IMG/VR virus record: IMGVR_UViG_3300007513_000004
Location: 1 to 64,000 of that record
Length of the DNA stretch: 64,000 nucleotides
Direction: 5' to 3' (one strand)
Both the position numbers and the translations under genes were made by a program. The notes under the pieces were generated by a model. That model was not told the DNA's origin and did no database searches. It saw nothing but the letters and a program-made list of their open reading frames with translations. Below, in pieces: positions 17,688 through 44,629 of the stretch (positions are counted from its first letter, which is position 1; each line of letters starts with the position of its first letter).

Positions 17688-17692
17688 ATATA

Positions 17693-26170: not shown

Positions 26171-26417
26171 AACAGAAGTTATGATATTATTAATAGGATG
26201 TTAAGTTTTTGCCCAGGATATTTCATAGCAGTTAAAGCTGGTCTCGAAATCGAGATCCAAGTTTAATTATCATTAGATGGGCATTTAGCGAGCCTTAAAG
26301 TCGCAGCTCCAGAGCTCATGAAGTTTTAAAGACTATTAGATAAGTATCTAATAAAGATTAAAATAAGGAGGCAGCCTGCCGGCACAACTTTAAGGCTCTA
26401 TACATCTGGATGTATTT

Positions 26418-26446
26418 TTCATTTTTAATTTTGCATCGACTACTTC
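26418..26446 (+). promoter_or_regulatory. CATC-type promoter (paralogue 1)
   Basis: TTCATT-TTTAATTTTGCATCGAC-TACTTC. Confidence 0.75.
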
Positions 26447-26499
26447 ATTTCGTAGGGCACAATGTCCTGCACCAACCAATGAGAAAAGGAAAAGATAAA

Positions 26500-27003
26500 A
26501 TGAGCGACAAGACTGCAATTTTTGAGAATGATAACACTGAGTCTCCTCTCCAGGTGATTCGTCAGACTATGAGCGTTTCGCTGTCCGATGGCGGCGCGGC
26601 CCAGGTTTCTTTTGCCACTAATCGTGGTAAGGGTTCCGGTGCCCAGGTTCTTGCTGTCGATGACTTTGCCGAGGTTGTGAGTACTCTCCAGGGTTACTCT
26701 GATGCTGGTATCGAAGAGCGTGAGGAAGAGCAGCTTTCTCCTGCTGATACGATTCGTCGTACCATCCGTATTGAGGATGGTGTGGTCAGCTTCCGTACCC
26801 GTTCGGGTAAGGGCGCGAAGCCTGCTAAGATTCCTGCGAGTCAGTTCGCGGAAGTCTGCGAGCTTCTGTCTGGTACTCTGTCTGCGGTGGAGGCTGCTGG
26901 TCAGTCTCTTTCTCCGGCTGATGAGACTGCTGATGAAGCAGCCGAAGAGCCTGCTATGGACGGAGACTACTCCGACTATGAGGACATGGGTGACGACGAG
27001 TAA
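26500..27003 (+). CDS. tandem-repeat protein, paralogue 1 of 3
   Basis: two internal repeats (SFATNRGKGSG / SFRTRSGKGAK); AGGA SD. Confidence 0.85.
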   Translation: MSDKTAIFENDNTESPLQVIRQTMSVSLSDGGAAQVSFATNRGKGSGAQVLAVDDFAEVVSTLQGYSDAGIEEREEEQLSPADTIRRTIRIEDGVVSFRTRSGKGAKPAKIPASQFAEVCELLSGTLSAVEAAGQSLSPADETADEAAEEPAMDGDYSDYEDMGDDE

Positions 27004-27024
27004 TTAATACTCTGAAACGAAAAA

Positions 27025-27052
27025 GCCCACCCGGTTTAACTTCCGGGTGGGC
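27025..27052. terminator. intrinsic terminator between convergent genes
   Basis: 10-bp stem GCCCACCCGG/CCGGGTGGGC with an A-tract on the left. Confidence 0.8.
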
Positions 27053-27182
27053 ACTCGTTTAATCTATATGTCAAACTTTTGCACGAGGATATGTTGTGCC
27101 GTCGTCTGCCTTATTCCAATTACCGCCTTCTCTTCTGGCTAATTGTGCTGGAGTTAACCTGTGTTCAGGAATGTCTTTTTCT

Positions 27183-27452
27183 CTATCTGCCCAACTGCGA
27201 GAAGACCCCACCGGTTTGTCCCAATCGAGAAAAAGACATTCCATCACCGATAGGTCCTGGAGCAGTTTCTTCAACCTCGCCCTCAGCCCCTACAAGCCAA
27301 CCAGGACCTTCGGCCCCTTCTACTGGGTTTCCATCAATATCTAATGGAATTCCTCCAGCAAATTTAAAAATTACTTTATCAATAACATCAGCTTCTTTCA
27401 CAAGGCCTCTGCTATCTAGTTCGCTGGCTAATTTAATTAATTCTACAATCAT
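27183..27452 (-). CDS. shared-leader family protein (possibly frame-disrupted)
   Basis: MIVELIKLASELDSRGLVKEADVIDKVIFKFAG. Confidence 0.75.
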   Translation of the reverse strand: MIVELIKLASELDSRGLVKEADVIDKVIFKFAGGIPLDIDGNPVEGAEGPGWLVGAEGEVEETAPGPIGDGMSFSRLGQTGGVFSQLGR

Positions 27453-27571
27453 TATAGTCTCACGATATTAATTAAAATAATTAATAGAACTTTAAAGCTC
27501 TCGATAAAACTCTCTATAGAACAAAATTTCTTTGATTAATCTTTTAAAATTACTGGTAGAAATCTTTTTCA

Positions 27572-27754
27572 TCAATCGACTTCTTTACCAAGAGTTAACT
27601 TAACTAATTGAGCTGCATTTTGCTTCAAAGTTCTAAGACCCTTTCTGGCCCTGGTTCCTGCCGCAGCATTACCAGCAGCATTCTTTGAAACATCAGTTTC
27701 TAAACTTGCAACCAACTCTTTAATCTCTTCCCATTTACTTTCTACTGTAGCCAT
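27572..27754 (-). CDS. histone H1-like (Hc1 family) small basic protein
   Basis: GNAAAGTRARK motif; GGAGG SD. Confidence 0.75.
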   Translation of the reverse strand: MATVESKWEEIKELVASLETDVSKNAAGNAAAGTRARKGLRTLKQNAAQLVKLTLGKEVD

Positions 27755-27806
27755 AACTACCTCCTTTGTTTTTTATTATACTATTTGTCAAACTTTTGCC
27801 CAAGGG

Positions 27807-28241
27807 CTACCTGTGGCCCCAGTAAGATTGCGAAGCCTGATTTGGCTCAATAATCCTTACTGTAGTTTGATCATGCCAACATTGACATTCTTCATCATAC
27901 TCTGGGCCGGAGATTTTCTTAATCAAAATCCCATCATCCCTTACTCCTAAAGAGAAATAGTGAGTGGCATTAAACCCAACCTCAAACCATTCCACGGCAT
28001 CGCCACTGAAAGGATCTTTATAAGAATAAGGCCCTGTGGGATCGGAAGAGCAAGAGATAAGCCACTCCTTAATATTGTCGGGACAAAGATTTAGAGCCGC
28101 CTCGGTAGCCGCCCTTCTTTCTGCCCTATATTCCCGATCTCGCTGCTTTGCTGCAATCTCATCTCTGTCGAAATGCCAATCGGGAATCGATGCGAGATCA
28201 TCAATCATGGTTATCTTCCTGTTCTTCCGTAAAGGTTTCAA
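27807..28241 (-). CDS. hypothetical protein
   Basis: ORF ending immediately before a box; start uncertain. Confidence 0.65.
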   Translation of the reverse strand: MKPLRKNRKITMIDDLASIPDWHFDRDEIAAKQRDREYRAERRAATEAALNLCPDNIKEWLISCSSDPTGPYSYKDPFSGDAVEWFEVGFNATHYFSLGVRDDGILIKKISGPEYDEECQCWHDQTTVRIIEPNQASQSYWGHR

Positions 28242-28464
28242 TATTTTCTACAGTTGTGTAAAAGCCTTCCTCGTCATCAATCTGATAACTCATAGAAACA
28301 GCTTTAGATTGATTATGATATCTAACGGCATAATCAATATGCCCCCACTCTGGGAGGTTGGTTATAAAATTATGACCACTATAAAATCTTTCGCCCCAGG
28401 GGACGCCACCACGTTCAATTACAAACATTATTCCATAACCTCCGCGTCGTAAACTTTGATCCAT
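28201..28464 (-). CDS. hypothetical protein
   Basis: ORF; start uncertain. Confidence 0.55.
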   Translation of the reverse strand: MDQSLRRGGYGIMFVIERGGVPWGERFYSGHNFITNLPEWGHIDYAVRYHNQSKAVSMSYQIDDEEGFYTTVENIETFTEEQEDNHD

Positions 28465-28682
28465 TGTTTTTGCTTTTGCGAAAAAGCAAGCGATTGACGA
28501 GAAATATGATTAATTAATTCTTCCCGCTTTTGTGCCTGCGAGCGTCGGATAGGCTCTTCCATCATTAATTCAAAACGAGCCTTGGCTACGCCATAATCCT
28601 TTCCGCTTGACCACCCCATAATATTTCCTGCCAAGTATGCCAAAATTCCAACACAACTAATGACAATTATTTCTGCAATCAT
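28428..28682 (-). CDS. small membrane-anchored protein
   Basis: N-terminal TM; GGAGG SD. Confidence 0.65.
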   Translation of the reverse strand: MIAEIIVISCVGILAYLAGNIMGWSSGKDYGVAKARFELMMEEPIRRSQAQKREELINHISRQSLAFSQKQKQWIKVYDAEVME

Positions 28683-28855
28683 TATTCGGCCCTCCGATAA
28701 TTATTAAAACAATATCCTGCCAAAACTGTGCATAACAATGCAAAGCCCCAGCTGTGGGCAGTAAACGCTTGCCATGCAAATACAGTATTTAGAATTGCGC
28801 AAAACAAGCTGACTCTTCGAGAACTTAAAAAATCCATAGTATTCTCCTATATGTA

Positions 28856-28932
28856 TGGCACGCCCGATAGGATTCGAACCTATGACCCTCGGCTTAGAAG
28901 GCCGATGCTCTATCCAACTGAGCTACGGGCGC
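28856..28932 (-). tRNA. tRNA-Arg(TCT)
   Basis: cloverleaf, loop CT-TCT-AA, CCA end. Confidence 0.96.
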
Positions 28933-28936
28933 TCAA

Positions 28937-29125
28937 TTAAAATTGATGCTCGCCTTCATCTGAATCAACAATCACTCCGCCGTCTCTTAAGGCGATGATT
29001 AAAGTAAGCATAGTATTTTCAATAAAGGTAAGTCTTTCATCAAACGAAGTAACCTGTTCAACCATTAATCTGCATTGGTTCGTAAGCCTCTGCACTTGCT
29101 CTTCCCATAAATCTCTAGTATCCAT
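28937..29125 (-). CDS. small coiled-coil hypothetical protein
   Basis: ORF. Confidence 0.65.
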   Translation of the reverse strand: MDTRDLWEEQVQRLTNQCRLMVEQVTSFDERLTFIENTMLTLIIALRDGGVIVDSDEGEHQF

Positions 29126-29349
29126 TATTCTGACTCTATATCTTTTGGTGCTGTTAACATTATAACACCTAGAAAGTCTAAAATGTCATCCAGCATGGCT
29201 ATTTTTTCTTTCACGCCTTCTTGGTCGCTAGAAAATTCTAAGTCTCTTATAAAAGATAGCAACGCATTATATTGCGCTTCAACTTCTGCGGAATCTTTGA
29301 AAACCTTAATTTGGCTCTTCAACGACTCTATCGTCAGAACTATCTCCAT
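29125..29349 (-). CDS. hypothetical protein
   Basis: ORF, TAATG coupling. Confidence 0.65.
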   Translation of the reverse strand: MEIVLTIESLKSQIKVFKDSAEVEAQYNALLSFIRDLEFSSDQEGVKEKIAMLDDILDFLGVIMLTAPKDIESE

Positions 29350-29857
29350 TACCCTCTTCTTTTATAATTTTCTGAAGTTGACCCATCAGAGCTTCTCCCC
29401 AAGCATCTTCTGTTTCTTGGGACGCCTGATAGTCTTCACTATAATACTCATCTTCTGTAATATAACCTGCATGACGTATAACTTCTCCATCCGGAGGTGA
29501 TAAATAGGTATCACAATCCATGTGCAAGTGCGCGGTCCAACGGTCCTTGGGCAGCGTCATACTCCCAGAGAGGGGAACCAACTCTCGGCATCCTTCCTCT
29601 TTTACAAAGAAGAATTCATCTTCTTGCAAGCCAACACTATCTGCGCCATGCAAGTCCTTGTGCCAACTCGGCTCATAATAAACCTGATGAATCTTGCCGG
29701 GAAAAGCCGTAGGTCCATCATAAAAATATGATGCAACAGTTGGCATAGCCTCCCACCACTCTTTCAGTTCTTCGGCAGACATTTCGGGAATCCAAACCCA
29801 ATGTCTATATCCGTATTCTTCTTCAAGAAGGACGACAATTTCTTCGGCCAAGCTCAT
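29306..29857 (-). CDS. hypothetical acidic protein
   Basis: ORF with GAGGTG SD. Confidence 0.75.
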   Translation of the reverse strand: MSLAEEIVVLLEEEYGYRHWVWIPEMSAEELKEWWEAMPTVASYFYDGPTAFPGKIHQVYYEPSWHKDLHGADSVGLQEDEFFFVKEEGCRELVPLSGSMTLPKDRWTAHLHMDCDTYLSPPDGEVIRHAGYITEDEYYSEDYQASQETEDAWGEALMGQLQKIIKEEGNGDSSDDRVVEEPN

Positions 29858-29874
29858 TCCACACCTCAGTTTTG

Positions 29875-30078
29875 TTACTTGATAACTGATGATAAAACAG
29901 TATTAATTTTTTCTTGAAGATCATAGTTAAGTTTGATCTCAAGAATATTATTAATTTTCTTGCCTGCCTTTTCCAGCAAGCCCTTGGGTGTCTGCACACC
30001 CGCGCATGTGTTACAAGGGTCAACCTCGCCACATAACTCACAGGCTCCTTGGCCTGGATATACCGTTGTTCTATTCAT
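29875..30078 (-). CDS. small Cys-containing protein
   Basis: CELCG...CNTC; AGGAGG SD. Confidence 0.65.
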   Translation of the reverse strand: MNRTTVYPGQGACELCGEVDPCNTCAGVQTPKGLLEKAGKKINNILEIKLNYDLQEKINTVLSSVIK

Positions 30079-30259
30079 TGTCCTTCCTATTAACTATCAA
30101 TTCTAATGCGTGCGCGCACGGGTTCTCTGTCATCATCCTGCACGGTACTCGTTATCCTTTCCATGCTATTGGCAATAGAAAAGAGGGGAAAACTTAAAGC
30201 CATTACCCCAAGGCAGGCTACTATATAAAAAAGAAACTCCATGTAAAACTCCATAATGT

Positions 30260-31387
30260 TTATTCATAATCCCTGACGGCAATTCCGACAGGGAATCTTG
30301 GACGACCATCGTCCGTTAACTCTTGATACCTGACTGTCAAGTATTTTCCAATATAATCATCTAAATTTTTATAGATTACTGCGCGTTCTTCATGACTTCC
30401 GCGTGGACGCACACTAAACTCAAGTCCATCGGAAGTGGTACAGCGATATACGACAAGACCAGCTTCCCGACCGGAACCGTCCTCTCCACCAATAATCTTA
30501 AACTCATCATCAACAAATCTCTTTACCTTTTGCAAATCATATGAACGATGCTTGTACTTGTACGCACTCGCTTGGTTGCGCACCATCATGCCCTCATAGC
30601 CTTGCTGAACAAACATGCTTTCATACATATCAAACTCTGCTTGGTCAACAACATCATATGTTGATATGATTTTAATATTCTTTCCAATGATGGTCCACCC
30701 CTGACAATAATGTGGAAACATTGTTGAGCCAACTCCTTTTTGCGGCAACCTACACTCAAATGCGAGAGAAGGGTGTGGGGAATCATAGATATGATATTCA
30801 AGCAAATCTGTATCATCCCTCTTCTTCTTGACGGCAGCAATGATTCTTTGGAACGTCCACCCATGCACGTACAACTCTCCATCCGTGCATTGCCCGTTCG
30901 CGAGCATGGCACAAAGCTGTGCATTAATCTTATCGGGGATATCAATAACCTTTCCCTTGCGCGACCACATAGTTACAACACCATCGTCTTTGCGTGCGAG
31001 CATACGCACTCCATCCAGCTTAGGCTGAACAAGACAGGGAAAGTTAATCTTCGCGCTATGCTTGTCATACCTGTGCGCGAGCATAGGTAGGAACAATCCT
31101 TCTGACGTAGTAGGAATCTTATCCTTATCCTCTACATATCCTGAATCCTTTTTACGGCTATGTGCAGATTGAGCTTCAGAACATGCCTGTTCGTAGACAG
31201 AGGTTTCGTTTGCTCTACCGAGATTCTTGCCCTCTCCAACATAGCGTTGGTCAAGTTGTTTCTTGCCGTCCTCATAGCCATGTTCAGTTTCGATGTAACA
31301 GGAGCCGTCACCCATCTTGAGAACCGAGATATTCCACTCTTTAATCTTTCCATTGGTGGACTTTCCATATAGTGTAGGTAGATTCAT
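30260..31387 (-). CDS. ATP-dependent DNA ligase with N-terminal WGR-like domain
   Basis: motif I QPKLDGVR, DGELY, GYEGMMVR, LQKVK, OB-fold YLTVRYQELT..G.PRFPV. Confidence 0.93.
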   Translation of the reverse strand: MNLPTLYGKSTNGKIKEWNISVLKMGDGSCYIETEHGYEDGKKQLDQRYVGEGKNLGRANETSVYEQACSEAQSAHSRKKDSGYVEDKDKIPTTSEGLFLPMLAHRYDKHSAKINFPCLVQPKLDGVRMLARKDDGVVTMWSRKGKVIDIPDKINAQLCAMLANGQCTDGELYVHGWTFQRIIAAVKKKRDDTDLLEYHIYDSPHPSLAFECRLPQKGVGSTMFPHYCQGWTIIGKNIKIISTYDVVDQAEFDMYESMFVQQGYEGMMVRNQASAYKYKHRSYDLQKVKRFVDDEFKIIGGEDGSGREAGLVVYRCTTSDGLEFSVRPRGSHEERAVIYKNLDDYIGKYLTVRYQELTDDGRPRFPVGIAVRDYE

Positions 31388-31396
31388 AATATTTCC

Positions 31397-31687
31397 TTAC
31401 AAGCATCCGTCTTTGCGGGCTGTTTCGTATAGATAGTTTGCCGAGGTTGCAAGAAAATCCTCTTGCTTGTGCCACCTATCTCGTTCTCTTTCCCAAACAG
31501 GTTGGGAAACCTTGCCTTGTTTGTAATCTTGAACAGTCAAGCTAAAATCTTTGCCGGAGACATCTCTGAGATTTTGAACATTCAGAATATCCTCAAGTAC
31601 GGGCGTGCATCTTGCCTCAAACTGTTCTTGAGTTTCCTGACTGGAGCATCCCAAGCAAAGAAATAACAATGGTATATATTTTAACAT
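31397..31687 (-). CDS. putative lipoprotein
   Basis: lipobox-like LCLGC after a hydrophobic signal. Confidence 0.65.
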   Translation of the reverse strand: MLKYIPLLFLCLGCSSQETQEQFEARCTPVLEDILNVQNLRDVSGKDFSLTVQDYKQGKVSQPVWERERDRWHKQEDFLATSANYLYETARKDGCL

Positions 31688-31902
31688 TATGCTTCCGCCA
31701 TGTCTGCAAAGGATAACGCAACTTCGCTCATGTATACGTCCGTACCTTCTTTGGAGATTTGAACAAGAGGCTCTCCATCAACCATCCTGATATCAACAAA
31801 GCCCTTTTTATATAAACTCAATAGAGTTTTATCAAAGGCCACCTCGTCTGATGGGCCACTTTTAATCTTGTTTTCCATATATTCAATAACATCCTTACTC
31901 AT
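31687..31902 (-). CDS. hypothetical protein
   Basis: ORF coupled on both sides. Confidence 0.65.
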   Translation of the reverse strand: MSKDVIEYMENKIKSGPSDEVAFDKTLLSLYKKGFVDIRMVDGEPLVQISKEGTDVYMSEVALSFADMAEA

Positions 31903-32482
31903 CTTCATCCTCCTCATAGTATTCTTCTGTGTTTTCAAAAGTTAGGCAACCCTCTTCCCAAACAGCTTCTCCCCGAAAGCCCATACCCGGTTCATCATAT
32001 TGCAAATGAAAGGCAAGGCTGGGCCAATCTTCTGCCACCTTCTCAAAAAACTCCATAGGCGGCCCCCATGCTGTAGTAAAACTATACTGCAAATCGTTAT
32101 CTTCGGAAACATCTAAAGAACTATCGCAGCCTCCCCATTTACAACCCCAATGTGTTCCTTCCCATTTGTATCCACCATACGGGCGAATCTGACCAACAAG
32201 CTCTCCAAGTTCAACAGCTCTTGTGTCATCATAAGGAAAGCATCTAAAGTCTTCCGGCACAGGGTAAAGAGCGTGAAACGAAAGGTCCACAGTGTCTCCC
32301 GGCTCTGGAGGAGAAGATACCATAGACTGCAACCTAATATCATCATGCAAAGGCCAGCTCTCACCACTATGAGGAGAAAAGCTATTGTACGACTGTGTTG
32401 GTCCCCGCGCTTTTACGCGAAACCTTTTGATATCCTTCTCTGGACCTGTAATATACAATGAGTTCATACACCAATTAGGCAT
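31895..32482 (-). CDS. DUF1281/YubB ferredoxin-like family protein
   Basis: MPNWCMN...WGCKWG...FTTAWGPP...YDEPG. Confidence 0.8.
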   Translation of the reverse strand: MPNWCMNSLYITGPEKDIKRFRVKARGPTQSYNSFSPHSGESWPLHDDIRLQSMVSSPPEPGDTVDLSFHALYPVPEDFRCFPYDDTRAVELGELVGQIRPYGGYKWEGTHWGCKWGGCDSSLDVSEDNDLQYSFTTAWGPPMEFFEKVAEDWPSLAFHLQYDEPGMGFRGEAVWEEGCLTFENTEEYYEEDEDE

Positions 32483-32665
32483 TTTATTCCTCGTCTGTTA
32501 GGTTGTTTCCAATCTCTTTAGCTTTACTTACAGTTGCTTCAATGCCTGCATCCACCGAGGCCTTTACGCTTGCAAGGCTTTTCGGATTATTTGTTGCCCA
32601 ATAAAGCAATCCATATACCCCAATACATACTAATGCGATTCTAAATAATTGTTTCATAAGCTCTC

Positions 32666-33061
32666 CTATTCAAGTTCTTGAAGTTTCTCCTCAAACAATG
32701 CACAGTGGCTATCGCATGGTCCAAGCTGCACACCTTCTTTGCACGCATACGTGGACCCCTCAAGCTCTTCTCCCATGATAAACGCACCATGCTCGCAGTC
32801 CATACAAATTTGTGAAGAAGGCCAAGTATTTATTGTAACAGAATCTCCATCATCCCAAATGTCATCTTGGGCAAAAACATTACAACTTTCGTGCTTATCT
32901 CTCAATTCTTGTATTAGTTCAAGCCTTCTTCTTAGCGCATCGTAATGATTGCTTGTGGGAGCAAGCCCTTCCTCAACATCCTTTAGCAAGGCTGAGACAT
33001 GATGAGACAACATCGTGTATTGCCATTCAAGGTCTAATTTATAAATATCTTTCATTACCAC
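32666..33061 (-). CDS. hypothetical protein
   Basis: ORF. Confidence 0.7.
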   Translation of the reverse strand: MVMKDIYKLDLEWQYTMLSHHVSALLKDVEEGLAPTSNHYDALRRRLELIQELRDKHESCNVFAQDDIWDDGDSVTINTWPSSQICMDCEHGAFIMGEELEGSTYACKEGVQLGPCDSHCALFEEKLQELE

Positions 33062-33303
33062 AACCTACCATTGTTATAATCTGCGCCACAGTCCTTACAG
33101 TAAACATCTTCATAGTTGCCCCCACAATTCTTATGTGGGCAGCAATCTACGTGCATAAGATAAATGCCTCCGCTAACAGCTCTGTCGCGAGTATACTCTT
33201 CTGTCTCAAAGACATTATCAAAACATACGCCGCAAGTGCCGATAGCAGCTTTAGCTTCACTCTTCATTCCACTTTCTCCATGCCTCAAGCTGTGGGTCAT
33301 CAT
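33055..33303 (-). CDS. small Cys-rich protein
   Basis: multiple CxxC; start uncertain. Confidence 0.6.
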   Translation of the reverse strand: MMTHSLRHGESGMKSEAKAAIGTCGVCFDNVFETEEYTRDRAVSGGIYLMHVDCCPHKNCGGNYEDVYCKDCGADYNNGRLW

Positions 33304-33505
33304 CCTCTCCCCAACGCTGATTTAGCCCTTGTTCAAGAAACAAACCTTCTTGGTCCAATGCCCAAGCAATAGCTGCTTCCGAAGTTAGAATGTTACTATC
33401 ATCAAGAAAATCAAGAATATCTTTATCATCCCAACACTCGTCCACAGACGTACACGTACCTCTGCCTACCTTTGGATGACTACGAATTGCGTCTACTCTG
33501 TGCAT
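33257..33505 (-). CDS. hypothetical phage protein
   Basis: VGRGTCTSVDECW motif. Confidence 0.7.
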   Translation of the reverse strand: MHRVDAIRSHPKVGRGTCTSVDECWDDKDILDFLDDSNILTSEAAIAWALDQEGLFLEQGLNQRWGEDDDPQLEAWRKWNEE

Positions 33506-33506
33506 C

Positions 33507-33698
33507 TTATTCTCCCGCCTCTTCACTTGTTGCCAAGTCGTGCCCAATTTTGTGCAAAACTTTTACAATTGTTTCTATGGTTTCTTTATCTTCCAAGTCT
33601 AACCCTGTATACATAGCCTCTGAGTATAGAATATCCCAAACAGCTTTCTCTAAACCTTCAGAAAGGTCCACCTGTTTGCTCAACATTGGTGAGGTCAT
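33507..33698 (-). CDS. hypothetical protein
   Basis: ORF. Confidence 0.6.
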   Translation of the reverse strand: MTSPMLSKQVDLSEGLEKAVWDILYSEAMYTGLDLEDKETIETIVKVLHKIGHDLATSEEAGE

Positions 33699-33702
33699 AA
33701 CT

Positions 33703-33969
33703 CTACCCTTCCTCTTTCCAGCGGTCAGTCTTTGAGAAAATCATTGTTGCTTCTTTCGCATCCTCACGCGCAAGTGCATCCTCTGAACGCTTACTGCCAG
33801 AAAGAGCCTTATCTTTGTGATACATGGTTCTACGAGAAGTGTTTACATCCTTTTGAGAAGCATAACGAAGGCGAGTAATCTCCCCACCATCTGATAGATA
33901 CTGCTCAACCATAGCGTTTAGTTCATCGTTAGAAATTCTTTTTGTATCGTCTGACATTGTATTCTCCAA
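33703..33969 (-). CDS. hypothetical protein
   Basis: ORF; YLSDGGEIT motif. Confidence 0.7.
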   Translation of the reverse strand: MENTMSDDTKRISNDELNAMVEQYLSDGGEITRLRYASQKDVNTSRRTMYHKDKALSGSKRSEDALAREDAKEATMIFSKTDRWKEEG

Positions 33970-33991
33970 TATGTAATGTAAAATGTAATCA

Positions 33992-34015
33992 CCGGGGTTG
34001 AAAGGTCAACCCCGG
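33992..34015. terminator. stem-loop
   Basis: CCGGGGTTGA-AAGG-TCAACCCCGG. Confidence 0.65.
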
Positions 34016-34024
34016 CGAAGATGA

Positions 34025-34285
34025 TTAGAAGATTGAAATGGAAGGTCCGTTGCTTTTCTTTGCAGTCCTAACAGACTTCTTCTTTTCAGGCTTTTCAGTT
34101 ACAAAGTCTGACCTTGAACAGCCTCCTGCAATAGCAGACCTTTGAAGCTCACTCCAGAGAGAGACTGGAGCAACAGTGTTTGCTCCGGGGTAAAGCCCTC
34201 CGTTGCCAGATACTCCAACCCAATAGTTGCCTTTCTTTGTCTTACAGTAACGGTATTTGTTTCCGTCAAAAATAGCCTCAATCAC
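34025..34285 (-). CDS. hypothetical basic protein
   Basis: GGAGG SD before GTG 34285. Confidence 0.65.
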   Translation of the reverse strand: MIEAIFDGNKYRYCKTKKGNYWVGVSGNGGLYPGANTVAPVSLWSELQRSAIAGGCSRSDFVTEKPEKKKSVRTAKKSNGPSISIF

Positions 34286-34342
34286 AATAAACCTCCGGTT
34301 TACCCCACGTTGAATCAAGGGGGTTCACAATGAGGTATTCGA

Positions 34343-34358
34343 TGCAAAAACCGTGCCA
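34343..34358 (-). promoter_or_regulatory. sigma54 (-24/-12) consensus site
   Basis: TGGCAC-GGTTT-TTGCA upstream of 34285. Confidence 0.6.
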
Positions 34359-34412
34359 AATAATATTTGAGGACAGTTTGTGGTATTTGTTAAACTTTTG
34401 CCCGGGGATTAT

Positions 34413-34441
34413 TTGATTTCTGTTTTATCATCGACTACTTT
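34413..34441 (+). promoter_or_regulatory. CATC-type promoter (paralogue 2)
   Basis: TTGATT-TCTGTTTTATCATCGAC-TACTTT. Confidence 0.8.
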
Positions 34442-34529
34442 GTATCACAAGGGGTTGAGCCCTTGACCCGCCATCGGGAAGGTGGAGAGCAGCCTCGCTG
34501 GTGTCGGGGCAAACACAAATGGAGTTGTA

Positions 34530-34934
34530 ATGAACATTTTTGGAAATGACAACGAGAGTCCCGCCGCCATTCTTCGTCAGACGATGAGCGTCAGCCTTAC
34601 TGATGACGGTATTCCGGTGGTTTCTTTCGCCACTAACCGTGGCAAGGGTAGCGGTTCGCAGGTGATTCCGGTTGCCGAGTTTTCCGAGTACGTTTCGACG
34701 TTGGAAGACATTTTGGAGTCCGGTATCCCCGAGGATGCTGATGAGGATTTGTCGGCAGGAGAGATGGTGCGTCGTACCATTCGTCAGGATGACGGTGTTA
34801 TCTCCTTCCGCGTGCGTGGAGGAAAGGGTGCAAAGCCCGCCAAGGTCAGCACTGATAACTTCGCAGAAGTTGTCGAGCTTCTTCGGTCCACGGTCGATGC
34901 GGTTGAAGGAGCCTGTGAGTCGCTGACAAAGTAG
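34530..34934 (+). CDS. tandem-repeat protein, paralogue 2 of 3
   Basis: SFATNRGKGSG / SFRVRGGKGAK; GGAG SD. Confidence 0.85.
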   Translation: MNIFGNDNESPAAILRQTMSVSLTDDGIPVVSFATNRGKGSGSQVIPVAEFSEYVSTLEDILESGIPEDADEDLSAGEMVRRTIRQDDGVISFRVRGGKGAKPAKVSTDNFAEVVELLRSTVDAVEGACESLTK

Positions 34935-35069
34935 CGTACACACGCATGCACAATGTACGCACAATGCGTGCGTGTGCGCGAAGTCCCCTCCGCGCAGGGT
35001 AGCGTCGTTAATAGCGGCGCTACCCACTCTTTTAACCTATATGTCAAACTTTTGCCCAGAGGGCAATGG

Positions 35070-35399
35070 TTAGCCAGTCAAAAGATTGATAAAGATATAA
35101 TAATGAAAGATACTTACGGCGAAATAGGCAACAAGTAAAATTCCAATACCCAATTGAGATAACCTGTTGTAAAGAAATTTATTTAATAAATAAATACTTG
35201 GCAAAGATAAAGTTAACTTTGTTATAACAAAGTTAAGCAATGACTTTTCAATTGGGCCGGACAAAACCGGATTAAGTTCTGGAATGTCATAACATGCAAA
35301 CCACACGATAGTCGCAATTAAATCAAACAACACCAGCATCAAAAGTAATTTGGTATGCCGTTGTTTAAAAAAACTTACATATCGCGCATTAGGTGTCAT
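35070..35399 (-). CDS. DUF5658-like membrane protein
   Basis: FDLIAT...ELNPVL...FVITK with TMs. Confidence 0.7.
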   Translation of the reverse strand: MTPNARYVSFFKQRHTKLLLMLVLFDLIATIVWFACYDIPELNPVLSGPIEKSLLNFVITKLTLSLPSIYLLNKFLYNRLSQLGIGILLVAYFAVSIFHYYIFINLLTG

Positions 35400-36047
35400 A
35401 TCACATTACTACCGTTAACTATCCATTTATTCAAACATGTTCCAAACTTCATAAGCCAAACATGTGCCAGCAAGAATCCATAGTGACGATAAAACGCCAG
35501 AGCCAGCAATAATCAATAATGAGTCCATCAAAACCTCCTTCGTCAAGGGCAGTCGTCGCCCTCTAACCCTATGTAGTCGGTGTAAATTTCTTGACAAAAA
35601 ACTTGTAATTACTTTACAAATTGATTTGTAAAACTTTTGCCCAGAACTGGACATTAAAAATCGAATTCTATTTTATCATCGGCTATTTTAGAGTGAAGGA
35701 AAAACGAAGGCAATGCAAAGAGGCAACCAGAATGGCCGTCACGAATCATATCTGATATCCAATTAGTGTTAGAATAGATATATTCAAAGAGCGGGCTGTC
35801 AAGCGGTTACTTTACCGAAAGCGGCGCTACTGTTTAGTCCTTGAGTACCGGGGAAACTCGGTACTCATTTATCTTTATTGTAAATTTTTTGCCCGAAGGG
35901 AAAACCCCGAAGGCACCTAGTACCTTCGGGGTTGAGTTTAATGCCATTGGCATGACCCGCTCACGGGTGAATTATCGGAATGTTTCTGTTTCCAGCCGCT
36001 TGACCCGTTGCAACGGCGCGGCATCTTGTTTATAGTAACCTCCTCGA

Positions 36048-36680
36048 TTAGTGTTTGTGATAGTCGACGTTTGATACCTTGGGGTTCCAACAAGCCCGGC
36101 ACGATCCGCACTTGCCGTCTTGCTTAAGAGCGGGGCAACCATGGCCCATACCCGCATCAATCGTACTCGTAGGCAGGTCGGTGCGCGGCGGCTTGCCACC
36201 TATCATCGTAGCCGATAGCCGGATGACAAGGTTAACGGGCCATGCTGCTACCCGTGCGAACGCTTCCCGGATCATCTTACCTTCACGAGACGGTGCCCAG
36301 AACTCTGCCCATGGTAGGCGTTCGGCTACCTCTACCCACATCAGAACATGATCGACGCTCTGAAAGTCACCGCTATCATGGATACGGAAGTATGGATCGT
36401 CCGGGTTAGTGTAGTGACCGATTAGCTTAACCATACCATCGGTCCATAGTGGATGGGTCAAAGCCTGATAGCGGCGCTCGTGCCCTAACTTGACGTTCGG
36501 GTACATGTAGTTATTTTTCATGGCGTAGCAGTTGCTACAACTTGATCCCTCTATCCCGGCAAGGATACTGCCCAGGATACAGCGTGTTGCACTTAGTGCG
36601 GTGCTGAACCCTGGCATCTTGCTCGGCTTACCTAATCCGCTACGATGCCCGGTTATCTCTTTCGCTTGTTTTAGATTCAT
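36048..36680 (-). CDS. Gp88-like phage protein (Cys cluster, FRxHDSGD)
   Basis: KPSKMPG...CSNCYA...FRIHDSGD...CGSCRACW. Confidence 0.8.
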   Translation of the reverse strand: MNLKQAKEITGHRSGLGKPSKMPGFSTALSATRCILGSILAGIEGSSCSNCYAMKNNYMYPNVKLGHERRYQALTHPLWTDGMVKLIGHYTNPDDPYFRIHDSGDFQSVDHVLMWVEVAERLPWAEFWAPSREGKMIREAFARVAAWPVNLVIRLSATMIGGKPPRTDLPTSTIDAGMGHGCPALKQDGKCGSCRACWNPKVSNVDYHKH

Positions 36681-36929
36681 TGTGTTCCCTTCAATGATTT
36701 GATTTGGTATTGTCAGTATTACCGCCACGTCATCTACTGTCTACAAGTTTTTCAAAAAAGTTTATAATCCCGCTCGGCGCACCCGTCTGGCCCGGTTTAC
36801 ACCGTCGCCCCGTTGATACCGTAGCGGTACTGAATAATATCGGACCCTGCATATTGGGTGAGCATATAATGAAAGGGGTGAGCATTAGCACGTCTGCCCA
36901 CTTACCTGTGACCACCAAACATATTTATA

Positions 36930-37504
36930 TATGTATGATGTACGCACACGGGTGAGTAACACCCTGCACAGGCTTTCTCCCTGTTCTTGTCCTTTGGAGA
37001 CGCTGAACAGCAAGCAATACTTCTGACCGACATTCTGTGCTCAAGTTGGTAAGCTGTACACTTCCCCCGCTTGTTACACGTTATCATTCAACCTCATGGT
37101 AAGGTATCCTAATAACCCCTTTCGGGACGACAAAATCGTTGCCGACTTTGCCAGAGAGACTTCTGCCTTCAGAAGTTAAGTTCTATCAGATTTCTCCGAT
37201 TTACCATGACTCTTTAGTCAGTGCCCTTATCCCGTTTCCACGATGAACCTACAAGTCCGCAGATACCCTCGGCTGCACTTCCACAGTAGTATGTGGACTC
37301 ATGCCTTAGATTACTGAATGATATTCAAGGCCACTACACCTCTTAACTCATTCCCCCTCACAGCCAAGCGGCAGGTCCATATGAATAGCACCCTTCTTGG
37401 GCGGGGTTCTCTCTATCTCCGAAGAGTGCAGGAGCCGGTAACTCCACCTGCATTTAAAGACCCAAGAACGGGGGTCAGTTTAAGTTTTCAAAGAACTTTC
37501 GCTC
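36930..37504 (-). ncRNA. candidate large structured ncRNA (about 560 nt)
   Basis: own promoter, boxA-like leader, more than 12 hairpins including UUCG and GAAA tetraloops, no credible ORF. Confidence 0.7.
37482..37496 (-). promoter_or_regulatory. boxA-like antitermination element
   Basis: GTTCTTTGAAAACTT just downstream of the predicted TSS. Confidence 0.6.
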
Positions 37505-37510
37505 TGTCAT

Positions 37511-37539
37511 AACATAGTTGATGTTAAAACAGAATCCAA
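37511..37539 (-). promoter_or_regulatory. CATC-type promoter driving the large ncRNA
   Basis: TTGGAT-TCTGTTTTAACATCAAC-TATGTT. Confidence 0.75.
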
Positions 37540-37630
37540 AAATTTTCGGGGAAAAGATTTACATAAATGTAAAAGTTTTGCCCCGATGAGTTTATCATAC
37601 GCGTCTGCGCAGATAAACTCAAAGGGAATT

Positions 37631-37825
37631 TTAGAGGTTTTTCCAACTCCAAGGTTCGCCGTCCAGCTTTCGCTGAAGTCGAATTCTGAAGCCCAAAGCC
37701 TTATGCCCCGTCAACGGAGTCAATAACTCAATGGCATACTTGACCTCGTCCTCGGTTGCTTTTCGCAAAAGAGCATCGCGGGCAAAGCCATAAACGAATT
37801 TCCGGTGTTCTGGATTGTCAGGCAT
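37631..37825 (-). CDS. hypothetical protein
   Basis: ORF with GAGGA SD. Confidence 0.7.
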   Translation of the reverse strand: MPDNPEHRKFVYGFARDALLRKATEDEVKYAIELLTPLTGHKALGFRIRLQRKLDGEPWSWKNL

Positions 37826-37887
37826 GTGTGTGTCCTCAAGTTAGGTGGCGAGGGCAGCGGGCGGAAAGTCCACCCGCCGCCTTTGTC

Positions 37888-38328
37888 TTACTCTTCGTCG
37901 GGAGAGCCGCCAGCAAGCTGACTACCCGCGTTCTCGACAGCATCAAGAGTGCTGCGGAGAAGTCCCACGACCTCTGCAAATTCACCGACTGGCATCTTGG
38001 CTGGCTTGGCACCCTTACCGGAACGAACCCGGAAGGAAATCACACCTTCGTCAGACTTGATAGTTCGGCGCACCGTTTCAGCGGCAGAAAGCAACTCTTG
38101 CTCGGCAGTCTCGGGGATGCCATTATCAACGTAGCTTTCCAATGTTTCAACGTAATCCCGATATTCCTCAACAGGAAGAATCTGGGCACCTGAACCCTTG
38201 CCGCGATTCGTGGCAAAGCTGACGACCGCTTGGCCGTCGTCGTCCAGAGAAACAGCCATTGTCTGACGAATCGTCTGGGCCGGAGACTCATTGTGCTCCG
38301 ATGCAAAAATGTTAGTTTTGTCGCTCAT
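37888..38328 (-). CDS. tandem-repeat protein, paralogue 3 of 3
   Basis: SFATNRGKGSG / SFRVRSGKGAK; two CATC promoters upstream (38385-38413, 38452-38480). Confidence 0.85.
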   Translation of the reverse strand: MSDKTNIFASEHNESPAQTIRQTMAVSLDDDGQAVVSFATNRGKGSGAQILPVEEYRDYVETLESYVDNGIPETAEQELLSAAETVRRTIKSDEGVISFRVRSGKGAKPAKMPVGEFAEVVGLLRSTLDAVENAGSQLAGGSPDEE

Positions 38329-38567
38329 TTATTCTACTCCATGCGGCATTTTTGGTTGATAGCTATATTGCTCGCCGCTACTGCGATATAGCCGATGCTA
38401 AAATGAAAATCGAAAATCTCTATCTCTTTCTCTTTCTTCTCTCTCTGCTACAAAGTAGTTGATGTTAAAATCAAATTGAAAAATTGCCAAATGTCAATCT
38501 TTTGCCCCGTCTGTTTTTGAATTCTGTTTTATCATCAGATACATAGAAACATAAGGAGTAAAGCAAT

Positions 38568-38810
38568 ATGTTCATCACAAAAACTTCAATGATTTCTGGC
38601 AGAACCAATACTCTTTGGGTTGAAGGCTTGACCCAGGATATGCTAAAGGCATGGGAAAACGGAGCCTTGATTCAAGACGCCTTGGCAGGAATTCCGCAGG
38701 AATTGCGAGAATTCGTAATGACTGGTGTCTCCCCTGACGAATGGAATAGAACATTCCCGGAAGAGGAAGAAGAGGAATGGGACGAAGATGATAAGAGCCT
38801 TCAGAACTAG
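38568..38810 (+). CDS. conserved-type phage hypothetical protein
   Basis: LIQDAL...REFVMTGV...EW; promoter 38517-38545; AAGGAG SD. Confidence 0.8.
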   Translation: MFITKTSMISGRTNTLWVEGLTQDMLKAWENGALIQDALAGIPQELREFVMTGVSPDEWNRTFPEEEEEEWDEDDKSLQN

Positions 38811-38919
38811 TAAAAGTTTTGCCCAGTGTAGGTTTGCTTCCTGATAAGAAAATATACCGAGAGGGCTGAAAATTTCAACTTTATTTTAGCATCAAATACA
38901 TTTAGACAGGAGAAAAGAA

Positions 38920-39249
38920 ATGGGACTTGACCAATATGGATTTGCCAGAAAAGGCGAAGAACAACTTGATATCGCCTACTGGAGAAAGCATGCCAACCTC
39001 GAAGGCTGGATGGCACGCCTTTATGTTGAAAGAGGTGGGGTAGAGGAAGAGTTCAACTGTACCGAACTACGACTTTTTGCAGATGACCTTTTAGCGTTGG
39101 AACATCAATATCAAAATCTCACCCTTGCTTCTGGCTTCTTTTGGGGAGTCTCGGAAGAGGAAGACGATGCGACGACCAGAGCATTTATTGAAGATGCTAA
39201 ATCGTTGATGGCCGATGGATACGAAATCATTTACACCTCATGGTGGTAG
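38920..39249 (+). CDS. conserved-type phage hypothetical protein
   Basis: MGLDQY...YWRKHANLEGWM...FNC. Confidence 0.8.
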   Translation: MGLDQYGFARKGEEQLDIAYWRKHANLEGWMARLYVERGGVEEEFNCTELRLFADDLLALEHQYQNLTLASGFFWGVSEEEDDATTRAFIEDAKSLMADGYEIIYTSWW

Positions 39250-41132: not shown

Positions 41133-41708
41133 CTAAAACTTTGAAGGGAACATATTGATAGAGGCCTGCTTTCTCGTATCCACGAACACAACGCGACTCC
41201 TGCATCCTCGACAGATATGGCCATTGGGCCTCTTTGGCATACGAACCTTCCAGCCCTCGGCGGCACAACCAGTGCAAGTCCACTTGACTTTCTTTTCCTG
41301 CTTCCGACGCAGACCTTCCGTATTGTAGTTATGACAACGATGGTTCTTATACTCTCCGGTGATGTTAGTCATCATCTGCTGGAAACGTCGGGTATGACCC
41401 TTTTCGTTATACTTGTGAACCAAGAAGGCATGAACCATTTCGTGAATCAGAGTTCTCTCAATCTTAGCAAGGTCATAGCCCTCATTTCGAAACAACTTAT
41501 CGGACAGGTCAATCTTGGTAGGCTCAAGATTTTGGCCTCTCGCATAACGGTTGGCAAAAGTTTCGACAAGCCCGCTTCGCTTGTAACGGCAGTAGCCTGC
41601 CGTAGTGGTCATACGGTTATTCCATACGACCGGGATATCGGGAATCTCGCTATTGAAATGCTCATCATTCAATCGGATAAACATTGCTCTGATGTTGGGT
41701 CTGGTCAT
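41133..41708 (-). CDS. SprT-like Zn metalloprotease with C-terminal Zn ribbon
   Basis: WNNRMTTTAG...LIHEMVH...GH...F; CTGC...CRGC; promoter 41727-41755. Confidence 0.88.
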   Translation of the reverse strand: MTRPNIRAMFIRLNDEHFNSEIPDIPVVWNNRMTTTAGYCRYKRSGLVETFANRYARGQNLEPTKIDLSDKLFRNEGYDLAKIERTLIHEMVHAFLVHKYNEKGHTRRFQQMMTNITGEYKNHRCHNYNTEGLRRKQEKKVKWTCTGCAAEGWKVRMPKRPNGHICRGCRSRVVFVDTRKQASINMFPSKF

Positions 41709-44454: not shown

Positions 44455-44530
44455 GGGTCCATAGCTCAACAGGCAGAGCGCCGGACTTTTAATCCGTAGG
44501 TTCAGGGTTCGAGTCCCTGTGGACTCACCA
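44455..44530 (+). tRNA. tRNA-Lys(TTT), second copy
   Basis: cloverleaf, loop CT-TTT-AA, CCA end. Confidence 0.95.
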
Positions 44531-44544
44531 TTTATCAAACTTTT

Positions 44545-44629
44545 GCCCGAGTGGTGGAATCGGTATACACAGCAGACTTAAAATCTGCCGCCTTTGGGCT
44601 TGCCGGTTCGAGTCCGGCCTCGGGTACCA
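44545..44629 (+). tRNA. tRNA-Leu(TAA)
   Basis: class II cloverleaf, loop CT-TAA-AA, CCA end. Confidence 0.95.

What the first reader, a model, noticed from the sequence alone, without database searches (positions are those of the whole stretch)
26500..38328. Three paralogues of an unrecognised two-repeat protein, each with its own CATC promoter
Seen: 26500-27003 (+), 34530-34934 (+) and 37888-38328 (-) each hold two repeats of pattern helix-beta-beta-(RGKG loop)-beta-helix (SFATNRGKGSG / SFRxRxGKGAK). All show strongly biased codon usage and two are followed by clear GC-rich stem-loops, suggesting high expression. Inference: topology resembles PC4/PUR/Whirly nucleic-acid binders; triplication suggests a stoichiometric role such as coating boxes, ssDNA or the large ncRNA (paralogue 3 is 400 bp upstream of it).
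Basis: partly seen in the sequence, partly recalled or inferred. Interest (0 to 1): 0.65.

Follow-up and report, generated by a model that had tools for sequence, protein, structure and literature searches.

The report
Triplicated PUR-fold protein of marine jumbo phages
An uncultivated marine jumbo phage carries three separately transcribed copies of a small, previously unclassified protein whose predicted fold matches the PUR-alpha nucleic-acid-binding domain, so it is most likely an abundant early single-stranded DNA/RNA binder.

Summary
Three paralogues (59-65% identical) lie at 26500-27003(+), 34530-34934(+) and 37888-38328(-). Each is an internal duplication of an alpha-beta-beta-[G-K-G loop]-beta-alpha unit. 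Each has its own CATC-type promoter-like motif (paralogue 3 has two) and a very stable GC-rich 3' hairpin (all three genes, not two). No Pfam, PHROG, NCBIfam or PDB sequence match exists, yet the family holds 165 clusters at 50% identity, almost all marine viral. Five related jumbo-phage records each give three profile matches (in G004 the third is weak and partial). A confident model of a distant member (pLDDT 91, pTM 0.80) matches PUR-alpha repeats I-II at Z 7.7-9.1 over 110-114 residues, well clear of all other folds. The window's own copy matches PUR only weakly, one repeat at a time (Z 4.6). The conserved residues are an aromatic plus a G-[KR]-G loop in each repeat, and no acidic column is conserved. 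Codon choice avoids the codons read by the phage's own tRNAs. Among the coding genes of a 4.7-kb stretch, only paralogues 2 and 3 appear in metatranscriptome contigs. Best reading: an abundant, probably early, PUR-like single-stranded nucleic-acid binder, analogous to jumbo-phage ChmC but not detectably homologous to it. The ligand (ssDNA, mRNA, the neighbouring ncRNA or the boxes) is untested.

The parts
26412..26450 (+). CATC promoter-like motif of paralogue 1 (T-rich -35-like part, then CATCGACTACTT at 26434-26445)
   Evidence: lies downstream of the alternative ATG at 26410, which supports the 26500 start
26500..27003 (+). Paralogue 1 (P0001, 167 aa, pI 4.1) with a strongly acidic C-terminal tail
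   Evidence: orthologue G1_a in G001 also has the acidic tail
27025..27052 (+). 10-bp GC-rich hairpin after paralogue 1; the T-run lies on the opposite strand, so possibly a two-way terminator
   Evidence: (z -6.5)
27067..27082 (+). Box TATGTCAAACTTTTGC directly after the paralogue 1 hairpin
34386..34401 (+). Box upstream of the paralogue 2 promoter motif (27 nt before CATC)
34407..34445 (+). CATC promoter-like motif of paralogue 2 (CATCGACTACTT at 34429-34440)
34530..34934 (+). Paralogue 2 (P0002, 134 aa, pI 4.4)
   Evidence: RNA contigs of run X16 at 34466-34652 and 34753-34902
34940..35025 (+). Three consecutive GC-rich hairpins after paralogue 2; the last (34997-35025) is followed by a T-rich tail
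   Evidence: (z -6.0)
35040..35055 (+). Box directly after the paralogue 2 hairpins
37853..37881 (-). 13-bp GC-rich hairpin after paralogue 3, with no U-tract
   Evidence: z -4.7
37888..38328 (-). Paralogue 3 (P0003, 146 aa, pI 4.5)
   Evidence: RNA contigs X15 37911-38061 (identical) and X16 37897-38043, 38212-38362
38386..38420 (-). Proximal CATC promoter-like motif of paralogue 3 (CATCGGCTATAT, 5' end at 38397)
38453..38487 (-). Distal CATC promoter-like motif of paralogue 3 (CATCAACTACTT at 38464-38453); orthologue G1_b also has two tandem motifs
38490..38505 (+). Box, inverted relative to the gene, just upstream of the distal promoter motif of paralogue 3

Best explanation
The three genes encode a phage-specific family of small proteins whose two alpha-beta-beta-beta-alpha repeats pack against each other into a PUR-type (PC4-like) domain. 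Each repeat presents a conserved aromatic residue at the end of strand 2, followed by a flexible G-[KR]-G loop. The most likely mechanism is that these residues grip single-stranded nucleic acid by base stacking and phosphate contacts, as PUR-alpha, PC4 and ChmC do. Each gene is its own transcription unit: a phage-type promoter motif, a leader, the ORF and a very stable 3' hairpin. Codon choice avoids the codons that need the phage's own tRNAs. The protein can therefore be made fast and in quantity, probably early, from three templates at once. It probably works as a dimer or higher oligomer. Shown: paralogy, the internal repeat, family size and viral restriction, the predicted fold and its PUR match, the conserved residues, the motif and hairpin architecture, the codon pattern, and presence in RNA libraries. 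Inferred: nucleic-acid binding, timing, abundance and oligomeric state. The ligand is open; I rank phage RNA (mRNA or the adjacent abundant ncRNA) and replicative or recombination ssDNA about equally.
For: Fold: the P0229 model (pLDDT 91.0, pTM 0.80) has PUR-alpha I-II as sole top hit in an exhaustive search (3k44_A Z 8.1, rmsd 3.7 A, 110 of 145 residues; next hit Z 5.7). Human and fly PUR-alpha score Z 7.7-9.1 on second look. The Foldseek top 13 hits are all PUR-alpha (probability 0.97-1.00, best E 8e-4). The P0003 model gives the same named neighbours one repeat at a time (PUR repeat III Z 4.6, DUF3276 and PurG in the Atlas). Conserved residues: F38/F99 (87-95% aromatic), G43-K44-G45 (G45 invariant), R100, G104-K105-G106, K108 (99% K/R), P109; no conserved acidic column. 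Oligomer: homodimer score 0.55 against a best control of 0.00. That mark was reached by 20 of 30 proteins solved as pairs of one chain and 1 of 23 solved as single chains. The runs agree in at least 92% of contacts and partner pLDDT is at least 76. Expression architecture. Codons: paralogues use phage-tRNA codons at 0.019, 0.118 and 0.13 against a genome mean of 0.41 (sd 0.11), among the six lowest of 176 genes. RNA: in four metatranscriptomes from four studies, the only coding genes of the 4.7-kb stretch with contigs are paralogues 2 and 3, seen in X15 and X16. Conservation: 165 clusters at 50% identity and three profile matches in each of five related records, the third in G004 being weak. 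An open niche: no OB-fold SSB, gp32 or gp2.5-type SSB in G000, G002 or the 94%-complete G003, although G002 and G003 encode a DnaE-type replicase. Precedent: ChmC, an abundant early jumbo-phage protein with a tandem beta-beta-beta-alpha Whirly/PUR-like fold, binds ssRNA with Kd 58 nM (PMC11077065). PC4-like domains generally bind ss nucleic acids (PMC7549692).
Against: There is no sequence link to PUR, PC4 or ChmC, and a shared fold does not show a shared function. Each repeat has three strands plus an extra N-terminal helix, not the canonical four strands. The window's own copy folds with uncertain repeat packing (pTM 0.49), and its PDB matches are weak (Z < 5). The strong PUR match comes from a distant member built on the same alignment. 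The proteins are acidic overall (pI 4.1-4.5). The intramolecular pairing in P0229 and the cross-chain pairing in the P0003 dimer model are not reconciled. RNA evidence is from contigs only, at low depth, in two of four runs, and cannot rank expression or exclude DNA carry-over. Codon avoidance is confounded with the higher GC of these genes (54% against 40%). Missing SSB HMM hits do not prove that an SSB is absent.
Confidence: 0.55

Rival explanations
1. Non-nucleic-acid role: an abundant oligomeric scaffold or structural/assembly protein (for example a COMM-like intertwined oligomer, or a virion or internal protein) whose G-K-G loops contact another protein or ligand.
For: Single-repeat matches to COMM domains are statistically tied with PUR for the P0003 model (Z 3.6-4.0 against 4.3-4.6). 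The homodimer prediction shows a very large interface (224-241 contacts). The proteins are acidic overall. High-copy expression also fits structural proteins.
Against: With the compact model COMM domains drop out and PUR-alpha stands alone. The genes sit in a module of small early-type and anti-defence-type genes, not among structural genes. Their codon usage is opposite to that of the bulk, structural part of the genome. The conserved aromatic-plus-basic-loop signature is typical of nucleic-acid binders.
Confidence: 0.15
2. Sequence-specific regulator: the protein binds the conserved box (ATGTMAAnnTTTTGCCC) or the melted CATC promoters and modulates transcription, as Borrelia Bpur and eukaryotic PUR-alpha act at promoters.
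For: Boxes lie at about -45 to -65 of several CATC motifs and next to all three genes. The box is conserved across all related phages, as is the protein family. PUR proteins can act as transcription modulators (PMC3764826 abstract; PMC7549692).
Against: A regulator rarely needs three high-expression gene copies. Boxes flank many genes of the 26-50 kb region in both orientations and are not specific to these loci. No helix-turn-helix or other dsDNA-reading element is predicted. The phage has two sigma factors that can account for the promoter motifs.
Confidence: 0.12
3. Anti-defence decoy: an acidic, early, abundant DNA-mimic protein (Ocr/ArdA style) that blocks host restriction or other DNA-binding defences.
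For: pI is 4.1-4.5, with an acidic tail in paralogue 1. An early-type codon pattern and strong promoter motifs are present. The genes lie in a region with an ArdC-like anti-restriction gene and other small genes.
Against: No acidic column is conserved in the family, and the conserved residues are basic, glycine and aromatic. Ten of 79 members have pI >= 7, and only 19 of 79 have an acidic tail. The fold matches a nucleic-acid binder, not known mimics. PADLOC holds defence rather than anti-defence models and was not scanned.
Confidence: 0.08

Closest known systems
PUR-alpha repeats I-II (PUR domain; type I PC4-like fold; PDB 3k44, 5fgp, 8cht)
   Same: Two tandem repeats of about 60 residues pair into one domain. 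Best structural match by a clear margin (Z 7.7-9.1, rmsd 3.2-3.6 A, 110-114 residues). Size is about 150 aa. Dimerisation is predicted.
   Different: No sequence similarity: the PF04845 HMM does not hit. [quoted passage not shown] The G-[KR]-G loops are family-specific. There is no third dimerising repeat. The family is viral, and binding is untested.
ChmC (phiKZ gp67 / PhiPA3 gp61), nucleus-associated RNA-binding protein of chimalliviruses (PMC11077065)
   Same: A jumbo-phage protein with a tandem beta-beta-beta-alpha repeat and a predicted Whirly/PUR-like fold. It is abundant and early, oligomeric, and has a disordered acidic C-terminal tail (as in paralogue 1). It had no annotation before structure prediction.
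   Different: Not detectably homologous (hhalign probability 0.25% against phiKZ ChmC, and 1.4% and 0.3% against a 10-sequence ChmC profile). ChmC is about 250 aa and single-copy. This phage encodes sigma factors, so it presumably uses host RNA polymerase. Chimallin was not searched for.
PC4/Sub1 and phage T5 PC4-like protein (type II PC4-like fold)
   Same: A sheet-plus-helix unit that pairs into a two-sheet domain. T5 sets a phage precedent for ssDNA binding in recombination-dependent replication (PMC7549692).
   Different: Only weak single-repeat matches (Z 2.8-3.4). The PF02229 HMM does not hit. PC4 proteins are single-repeat homodimers.
Bacterial Pur-alpha-like proteins (Borrelia Bpur, DUF3276/PF11680)
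   Same: Prokaryotic PUR-fold proteins. Atlas and VIA list them among the nearest named neighbours of a single repeat.
   Different: They are single-repeat proteins that form homodimers. There is no sequence match, and they are cellular rather than viral.
Cyanobacterial structural-genomics proteins 2it9 and 2nvn (function unknown)
   Same: Second-best structural neighbours (Z 5.3-5.7 over 93-101 residues).
   Different: About 3 Z units below PUR-alpha, with unknown function. The Atlas feature lead to DUF1818 (0.77) is below that tool's noise level, and any link between it and these entries was not tested.

Membership tests
PUR family (Pfam PF04845 PurA / PUR repeat) | Sequence match to the PUR repeat profile | tested here: not met
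   No PF04845 hit in the protein scans at E<=1, in the 79-member scan or in a six-frame genome search at E<=10.
PUR family (Pfam PF04845 PurA / PUR repeat) | Two repeats pair into one PUR domain with the helices packed on the partner's sheet | tested here: met
   The P0229 model (pTM 0.80) superposes on PUR-alpha I-II at Z 7.7-9.1, rmsd 3.2-3.6 A, over 110-114 residues spanning both repeats. For P0003 the pairing is predicted across chains.
PUR family (Pfam PF04845 PurA / PUR repeat) | Each repeat is beta-beta-beta-beta-alpha | tested here: not met
   DSSP on both models gives helix, three strands, helix per repeat.
PUR family (Pfam PF04845 PurA / PUR repeat) | Binds single-stranded DNA/RNA (GGN preference) and destabilises duplexes | not testable with these tools
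   Needs EMSA, fluorescence polarisation or unwinding assays.
PC4-like structural superfamily (Janowski and Niessing 2020, PMC7549692) | A domain of about 150 aa made of two sheet-plus-helix repeats, formed intramolecularly (type I) or by dimerisation (type II), without need of sequence conservation | tested here: met
   Two repeats in 134-167 aa. PUR-alpha is the top hit and Whirly proteins follow in Foldseek. The strand count differs (3 against 4), as it does in ChmC.
ChmC family (chimallivirus nucleus-associated RNA-binding protein) | Sequence homology to phiKZ gp67 / PhiPA3 gp61 | tested here: not met
   tblastn of P0003 against phages found nothing. hhalign probabilities are 0.25%, 1.4% and 0.3%.
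ChmC family (chimallivirus nucleus-associated RNA-binding protein) | Encoded by a nucleus-forming phage (chimallin shell, own multisubunit RNA polymerases) | not tested
   Chimallin was not searched for. PF00562 and PF00940 gave no hit and two sigma-70 genes are present, which points to use of host polymerase.
Whirly family (PBF-2/WHY, MRP1/2) | Whirly-type two-repeat domain that assembles into tetramers | tested here: not met
   Z is only 2.8-3.4 with rmsd 4.8-9.4 A. Tetramer formation was not tested.
COMM domain | A beta-beta-beta-alpha unit that forms intertwined dimers; close structural match | tested here: inconclusive
   Tied with PUR for single repeats of the P0003 model (Z 3.6-4.0), but absent from the top of the list for the compact model.
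Canonical phage/bacterial SSBs (OB-fold SSB PF00436, T4 gp32 PF08804, gp2.5/Enc34 type PF10991) | Match to one of these profiles | tested here: not met
   Neither the paralogues nor any frame of G000, G002 or G003 matches. The gp32 and Enc34 searches had no positive control.
DNA-mimic anti-restriction proteins (Ocr/ArdA type) | A conserved array of surface acidic residues that mimics DNA phosphates | tested here: not met
   No conserved acidic column, and 10 of 79 members have pI >= 7.

The most novel reading that the evidence does not exclude
The trio is the protein partner of the neighbouring, extremely abundant, roughly 560-600-nt structured phage RNA (about 36875-37495, minus strand, co-oriented with paralogue 3). 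Together they would form a phage-encoded ribonucleoprotein. Alternatively, the family is a PUR-fold replicative SSB that replaces the OB-fold SSB in a phage clade with a DnaE-type replicase.
Probability: 0.2. Interest if true: 0.8.

Novelty: new variant of a known kind. Interest (0 to 1): 0.52.

Why it matters
PUR/PC4-like domains are invisible to sequence searches, and ChmC recently showed that such a protein can be essential in jumbo phages. This finding is a second, unrelated-by-sequence viral family with that fold. It is widespread in the ocean (165 clusters at 50% identity) and kept at about three high-expression copies per genome. It is also the only coding signal from this stretch seen in environmental RNA. 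If it binds ssDNA, it would fill the missing-SSB gap of a clade that has its own Pol III-type replicase. If it binds RNA, it may partner with an unclassified large phage RNA that dominates the metatranscriptome signal. Either result would give function to a sizeable block of marine viral dark matter and would justify a new Pfam/PHROG family.

Tried and rejected
Family scans: Pfam, PHROGs and NCBIfam gave only sub-threshold chance hits (HTH_32, DUF6517, DUF7880, phrog_9308, SCO6880).

Sequence searches against solved structures: profiles of the trio, of 79 family members and of 104 single repeats found nothing.

GenBank phages: tblastn and megablast found no relative; the only match was to the tRNA-Arg.

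Bacterial genomes: only two short MAG contigs, probably mis-binned phage. The search for related loci with the 79-sequence alignment failed because no conserved stretch was long enough; the 3-sequence alignment worked.

PF04845 and PF02229 searched against the genome: no hit.

Homology to ChmC: rejected.

Atlas feature search: DUF1818 at 0.77, below that tool's noise level, kept only as a lead.

BFVD viral structures: only uncharacterised small proteins, one repeat at a time.

Rfam for the adjacent RNA: nothing, even at E<=1.

Phage RNA polymerase: PF00940 and PF00562 absent. The PF00940 search had no positive control.

DNA polymerase families A and B: absent; DnaE type present in G002 and G003.

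A plain sigma-70 reading of the box (it contains TTGACA on the minus strand) was considered and dropped, because no -10 element sits at the right spacing.

No other genetic code was used.

Full report
SETTING. The window is the first 64 kb of a 223,402-bp IMG/VR virus record that CheckV rates 67% complete. It has about 40% GC, many small genes, nine tRNAs and a tmRNA. It encodes two sigma-70-family genes, and no RNA polymerase of its own was detected. GenBank holds no close phage relative. Fourteen marine or seawater DNA runs hold the stretch or parts of it.

THE OBSERVATION. They are 59-65% identical and are the only copies in the record. The starts at 26500 and 34530 are the right ones, not the longer ORFs from 26410 and 34482. 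Orthologues begin at the same residues, and the promoter-like motif of paralogue 1 lies downstream of 26410. The internal duplication is significant: half against half gives E 7e-9 and 4e-8.

TRANSCRIPTION-UNIT ARCHITECTURE. Each gene is preceded by a roughly 32-bp motif with consensus TTTCATTTCTGTTTTATCATCRRYTACWTT. The pattern CATCRRYTAYWT has 16 genome-wide hits against 1.8 in shuffles. Fifteen are intergenic between 26 and 50 kb, all facing a gene start, and paralogue 3 has two in tandem. The layout looks like a -35-like TTTCAT, a conserved spacer and a -10-like TACWTT. That would suit one of the phage sigma factors, but this is inference. Related phages have lineage-specific versions of the same core (TCGRYTAYWT...GTG) in front of every copy. 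All three genes end in very stable GC-rich hairpins (z -6.5, -6.0, -4.7). A second conserved element, the box TATGTCAAACTTTTGC(CC), has 29 matches against 1 expected. It follows the hairpins of paralogues 1 and 2 and precedes the promoter motifs of paralogues 2 and 3. It also flanks many other genes of the region, so it is not specific to these loci.

CODON USAGE AND EXPRESSION. The pooled genes use CGT for 67% of Arg (genome 7%) and never AGA (genome 49%). They use AAG for 94% of Lys and CAG for 88% of Gln, and they contain no ATA, TTA or GTA. The avoided codons are the ones read by the phage's own tRNAs (AGA, AAA, TTA, GGA, ACA, CCA). The fraction of such codons is 0.019, 0.118 and 0.13, against a genome mean of 0.41 with sd 0.11. 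That places the three among the six lowest of 176 genes. The whole 26-52 kb block averages 0.22, against 0.44 elsewhere. This fits translation from the host tRNA pool, hence early expression. It is confounded with the higher GC of these genes (54%). By ENC, paralogue 3 is not biased. Four metatranscriptomes from four studies were laid on 34300-39000. The dominant signal is a non-coding stretch at about 36875-37480. The only coding genes with any RNA contig are paralogue 2 (run X16) and paralogue 3 (runs X15 and X16), and nothing maps to the remaining roughly 3.5 kb of genes. These are contigs at low depth, so they show presence only.

FAMILY. The word-index search found 605 clusters at 90% identity, all unnamed or 'hypothetical', from Tara, JGI, ENA and Logan marine data. 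The exhaustive profile search found 165 clusters at 50% identity. Atlas clusters of the family are 91-100% viral. Five related jumbo-phage records of 88-317 kb each give three profile matches; the third in G004 is a weak, partial one. G000 and G001 share three orthologous pairs, including the acidic-tailed form. In G003, G004 and G005 the copies cluster within each genome at 62-91% identity. That implies repeated duplication or gene conversion while the count stays near three. It argues for dosage rather than three fixed, differentiated subunits.

FOLD. No sequence method links the family to anything known. The model of P0003 is locally confident (pLDDT 88.5) but its repeats are not confidently packed (pTM 0.49). 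Its matches are weak and cover one repeat at a time: PUR repeat III Z 4.6, COMM domains 3.6-4.0, PC4/Sub1 3.0-3.4, and DUF3276 and PurG in the Atlas. A distant member (P0229, 27% identical) folds compactly (pLDDT 91.0, pTM 0.80). For that model Pur-alpha repeats I-II stand alone at the top of an exhaustive search (Z 8.1, next 5.7). They fill the first 13 Foldseek ranks (probability 0.97-1.00). On second look they score Z 7.7-9.1 at rmsd 3.2-3.6 A over 110-114 residues, while Whirly and MRP proteins reach only 2.8-3.4. The domain is therefore a PUR-type member of the PC4-like structural superfamily as defined in PMC7549692. It has two departures from the canon: three strands per repeat and an extra N-terminal helix. 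Both models rest on the same alignment, so they are not fully independent.

OLIGOMER. The homodimer test supports binding but does not show it. The score is 0.55 against a best control of 0.00. That mark was reached by 20 of 30 proteins solved as pairs of one chain and by 1 of 23 solved as single chains. The runs agree in at least 92% of contacts, and partner pLDDT is at least 76. The lowest-error contacts join the repeat-1 helix (residues 53-67) of one chain to the repeat-2 helix (116-135) of the other. This is the same repeat-to-repeat pairing as in the compact monomer, but across chains. Whether the pairing is intra- or intermolecular is unresolved.

FUNCTIONAL INFERENCE. The family-wide conserved positions are an aromatic residue at the end of strand 2 in each repeat, followed by G-[KR]-G. 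Repeat 2 adds R100, K108 and P109. No acidic position is conserved, and 10 of 79 members are basic. PC4-like domains bind nucleic acids on their sheets and loops through aromatic stacking and phosphate contacts. ChmC, a jumbo-phage protein of the same design, is abundant and early, is a tetramer, and binds ssRNA. I therefore favour an abundant single-stranded nucleic-acid binder, with confidence 0.55. Two ligands are attractive. The first is ssDNA. G002 and G003 encode a DnaE-type replicase, yet no OB-fold SSB, gp32 or gp2.5-type SSB is detectable even in the 94%-complete G003. Paralogue 1 also carries an SSB-style acidic tail. The second is RNA. Paralogue 3 lies about 390 nt upstream of, and is co-oriented with, a conserved structured RNA that dominates the metatranscriptomes. 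The same arrangement holds in G001 but not in G003.

RIVALS. The alternatives are a non-nucleic-acid scaffold, a box- or promoter-binding regulator and a DNA-mimic decoy. They are weighed in their own sections of this report.

MEMBERSHIP AND NOVELTY. By sequence the family is not a member of the PUR, PC4 or ChmC families. By structure it belongs to the PC4-like superfamily and is closest to the PUR domain. I rate it a new variant of a known kind. The family is unclassified but widespread and viral. Its repeat is modified, it has a characteristic G-K-G loop signature, and it shows an unusual gene organisation with about three monocistronic high-expression copies.

LIMITS. Nothing here measures binding, timing or abundance. 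The host is unknown. The record is incomplete. The absence of relatives in GenBank phages may partly reflect records that were withheld.

Noticed in passing
window 36875-37495 (minus strand): A large structured non-coding RNA of about 560-600 nt. It is by far the most abundant signal in four metatranscriptomes from four studies (word depths about 100-900), and many variant contigs share a conserved core at about 37222-37270. There is no Rfam match even at E<=1. Homologues of 70-72% identity occur in G001 (same position relative to the paralogue 3 orthologue) and in G003 (20 kb from the paralogues). GNRA-type loops (CCCGAAAGGG) and a poly-T loose end before 36875 indicate the minus strand, co-oriented with paralogue 3.
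   Followed up: partly
window 25852-50170, e.g. 27067-27082, 35040-55, 45027-42: The box TATGTCAAACTTTTGC(CC) has 29 matches against 1 expected, nearly all between 25.8 and 50 kb, in both orientations. It often sits right after terminator hairpins or at about -45 to -65 of CATC motifs. The box is conserved in all five related phages, whereas the promoter core varies by lineage. Its binding partner is unknown.
   Followed up: partly
window 26434-50040 (15 sites; e.g. 41739-, 43374-, 44066+, 47889-): A family of roughly 32-bp promoter-like motifs (TTTCATTTCTGTTTTATCATCRRYTACWTT) heads at least 15 transcription units in a GC-richer block with different codon usage (26-52 kb). They are probably read with one of the two phage sigma factors.
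   Followed up: partly
window 35677-35877 (+): A CATC motif at 35677 is followed by no ORF, and then by a terminator-like hairpin with a T-tail at 35842-35877. This is a candidate small RNA of about 170 nt, antisense-adjacent to the GP88-like gene. No RNA contig covered it.
   Followed up: no
window 3893-4750 (-) and genome about 130030-130185 (-): Two sigma-70-family genes (regions 2 and 4 in the first), with no phage RNA polymerase detected in this 67%-complete record.
   Followed up: partly
window 27572-27754 (-): A 60-aa Hc1-type histone H1-like protein (PF07432, E 2e-12), 570 bp from paralogue 1. It is another small putative nucleic-acid binder in the same module.
   Followed up: no
window 1878-2227 (-), 10790-18203, 28856, 44455-44629: A phage-encoded tmRNA (tag ANNNYYYEPVALAA) and nine tRNAs. 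Six have anticodons that read A-ending codons (AGA, AAA, TTA, GGA, ACA, CCA), which are common in the bulk genome and avoided in the 26-52 kb block.
   Followed up: partly
window 41133-41708 (-), 45303-45992 (-), 50235-51176 (-), 51624-52322 (-): SprT-like, metallophosphatase and ArdC-like (ArdcN plus zincin peptidase) genes, and an unannotated ORF of 67% GC. This looks like an anti-defence or early module in a compositionally distinct island.
   Followed up: no
loci L016/L022/L025 (G003), L017/L021 (G004), L019/L024/L027 (G005): Within these relatives the copies are more alike within a genome (62-91%) than between genomes. This suggests gene conversion or recurrent duplication with the copy number held near three. 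G004 also has a divergent 148-aa relative that matches only part of the profile (L029).
   Followed up: partly
genome 110494-112848 (-) and 161584-217583 (-): A 784-aa protein with a poly(A) polymerase/CCA-adding head domain (PF01743), and a run of giant ORFs (up to 3,319 aa) without Pfam matches among those tested.
   Followed up: no
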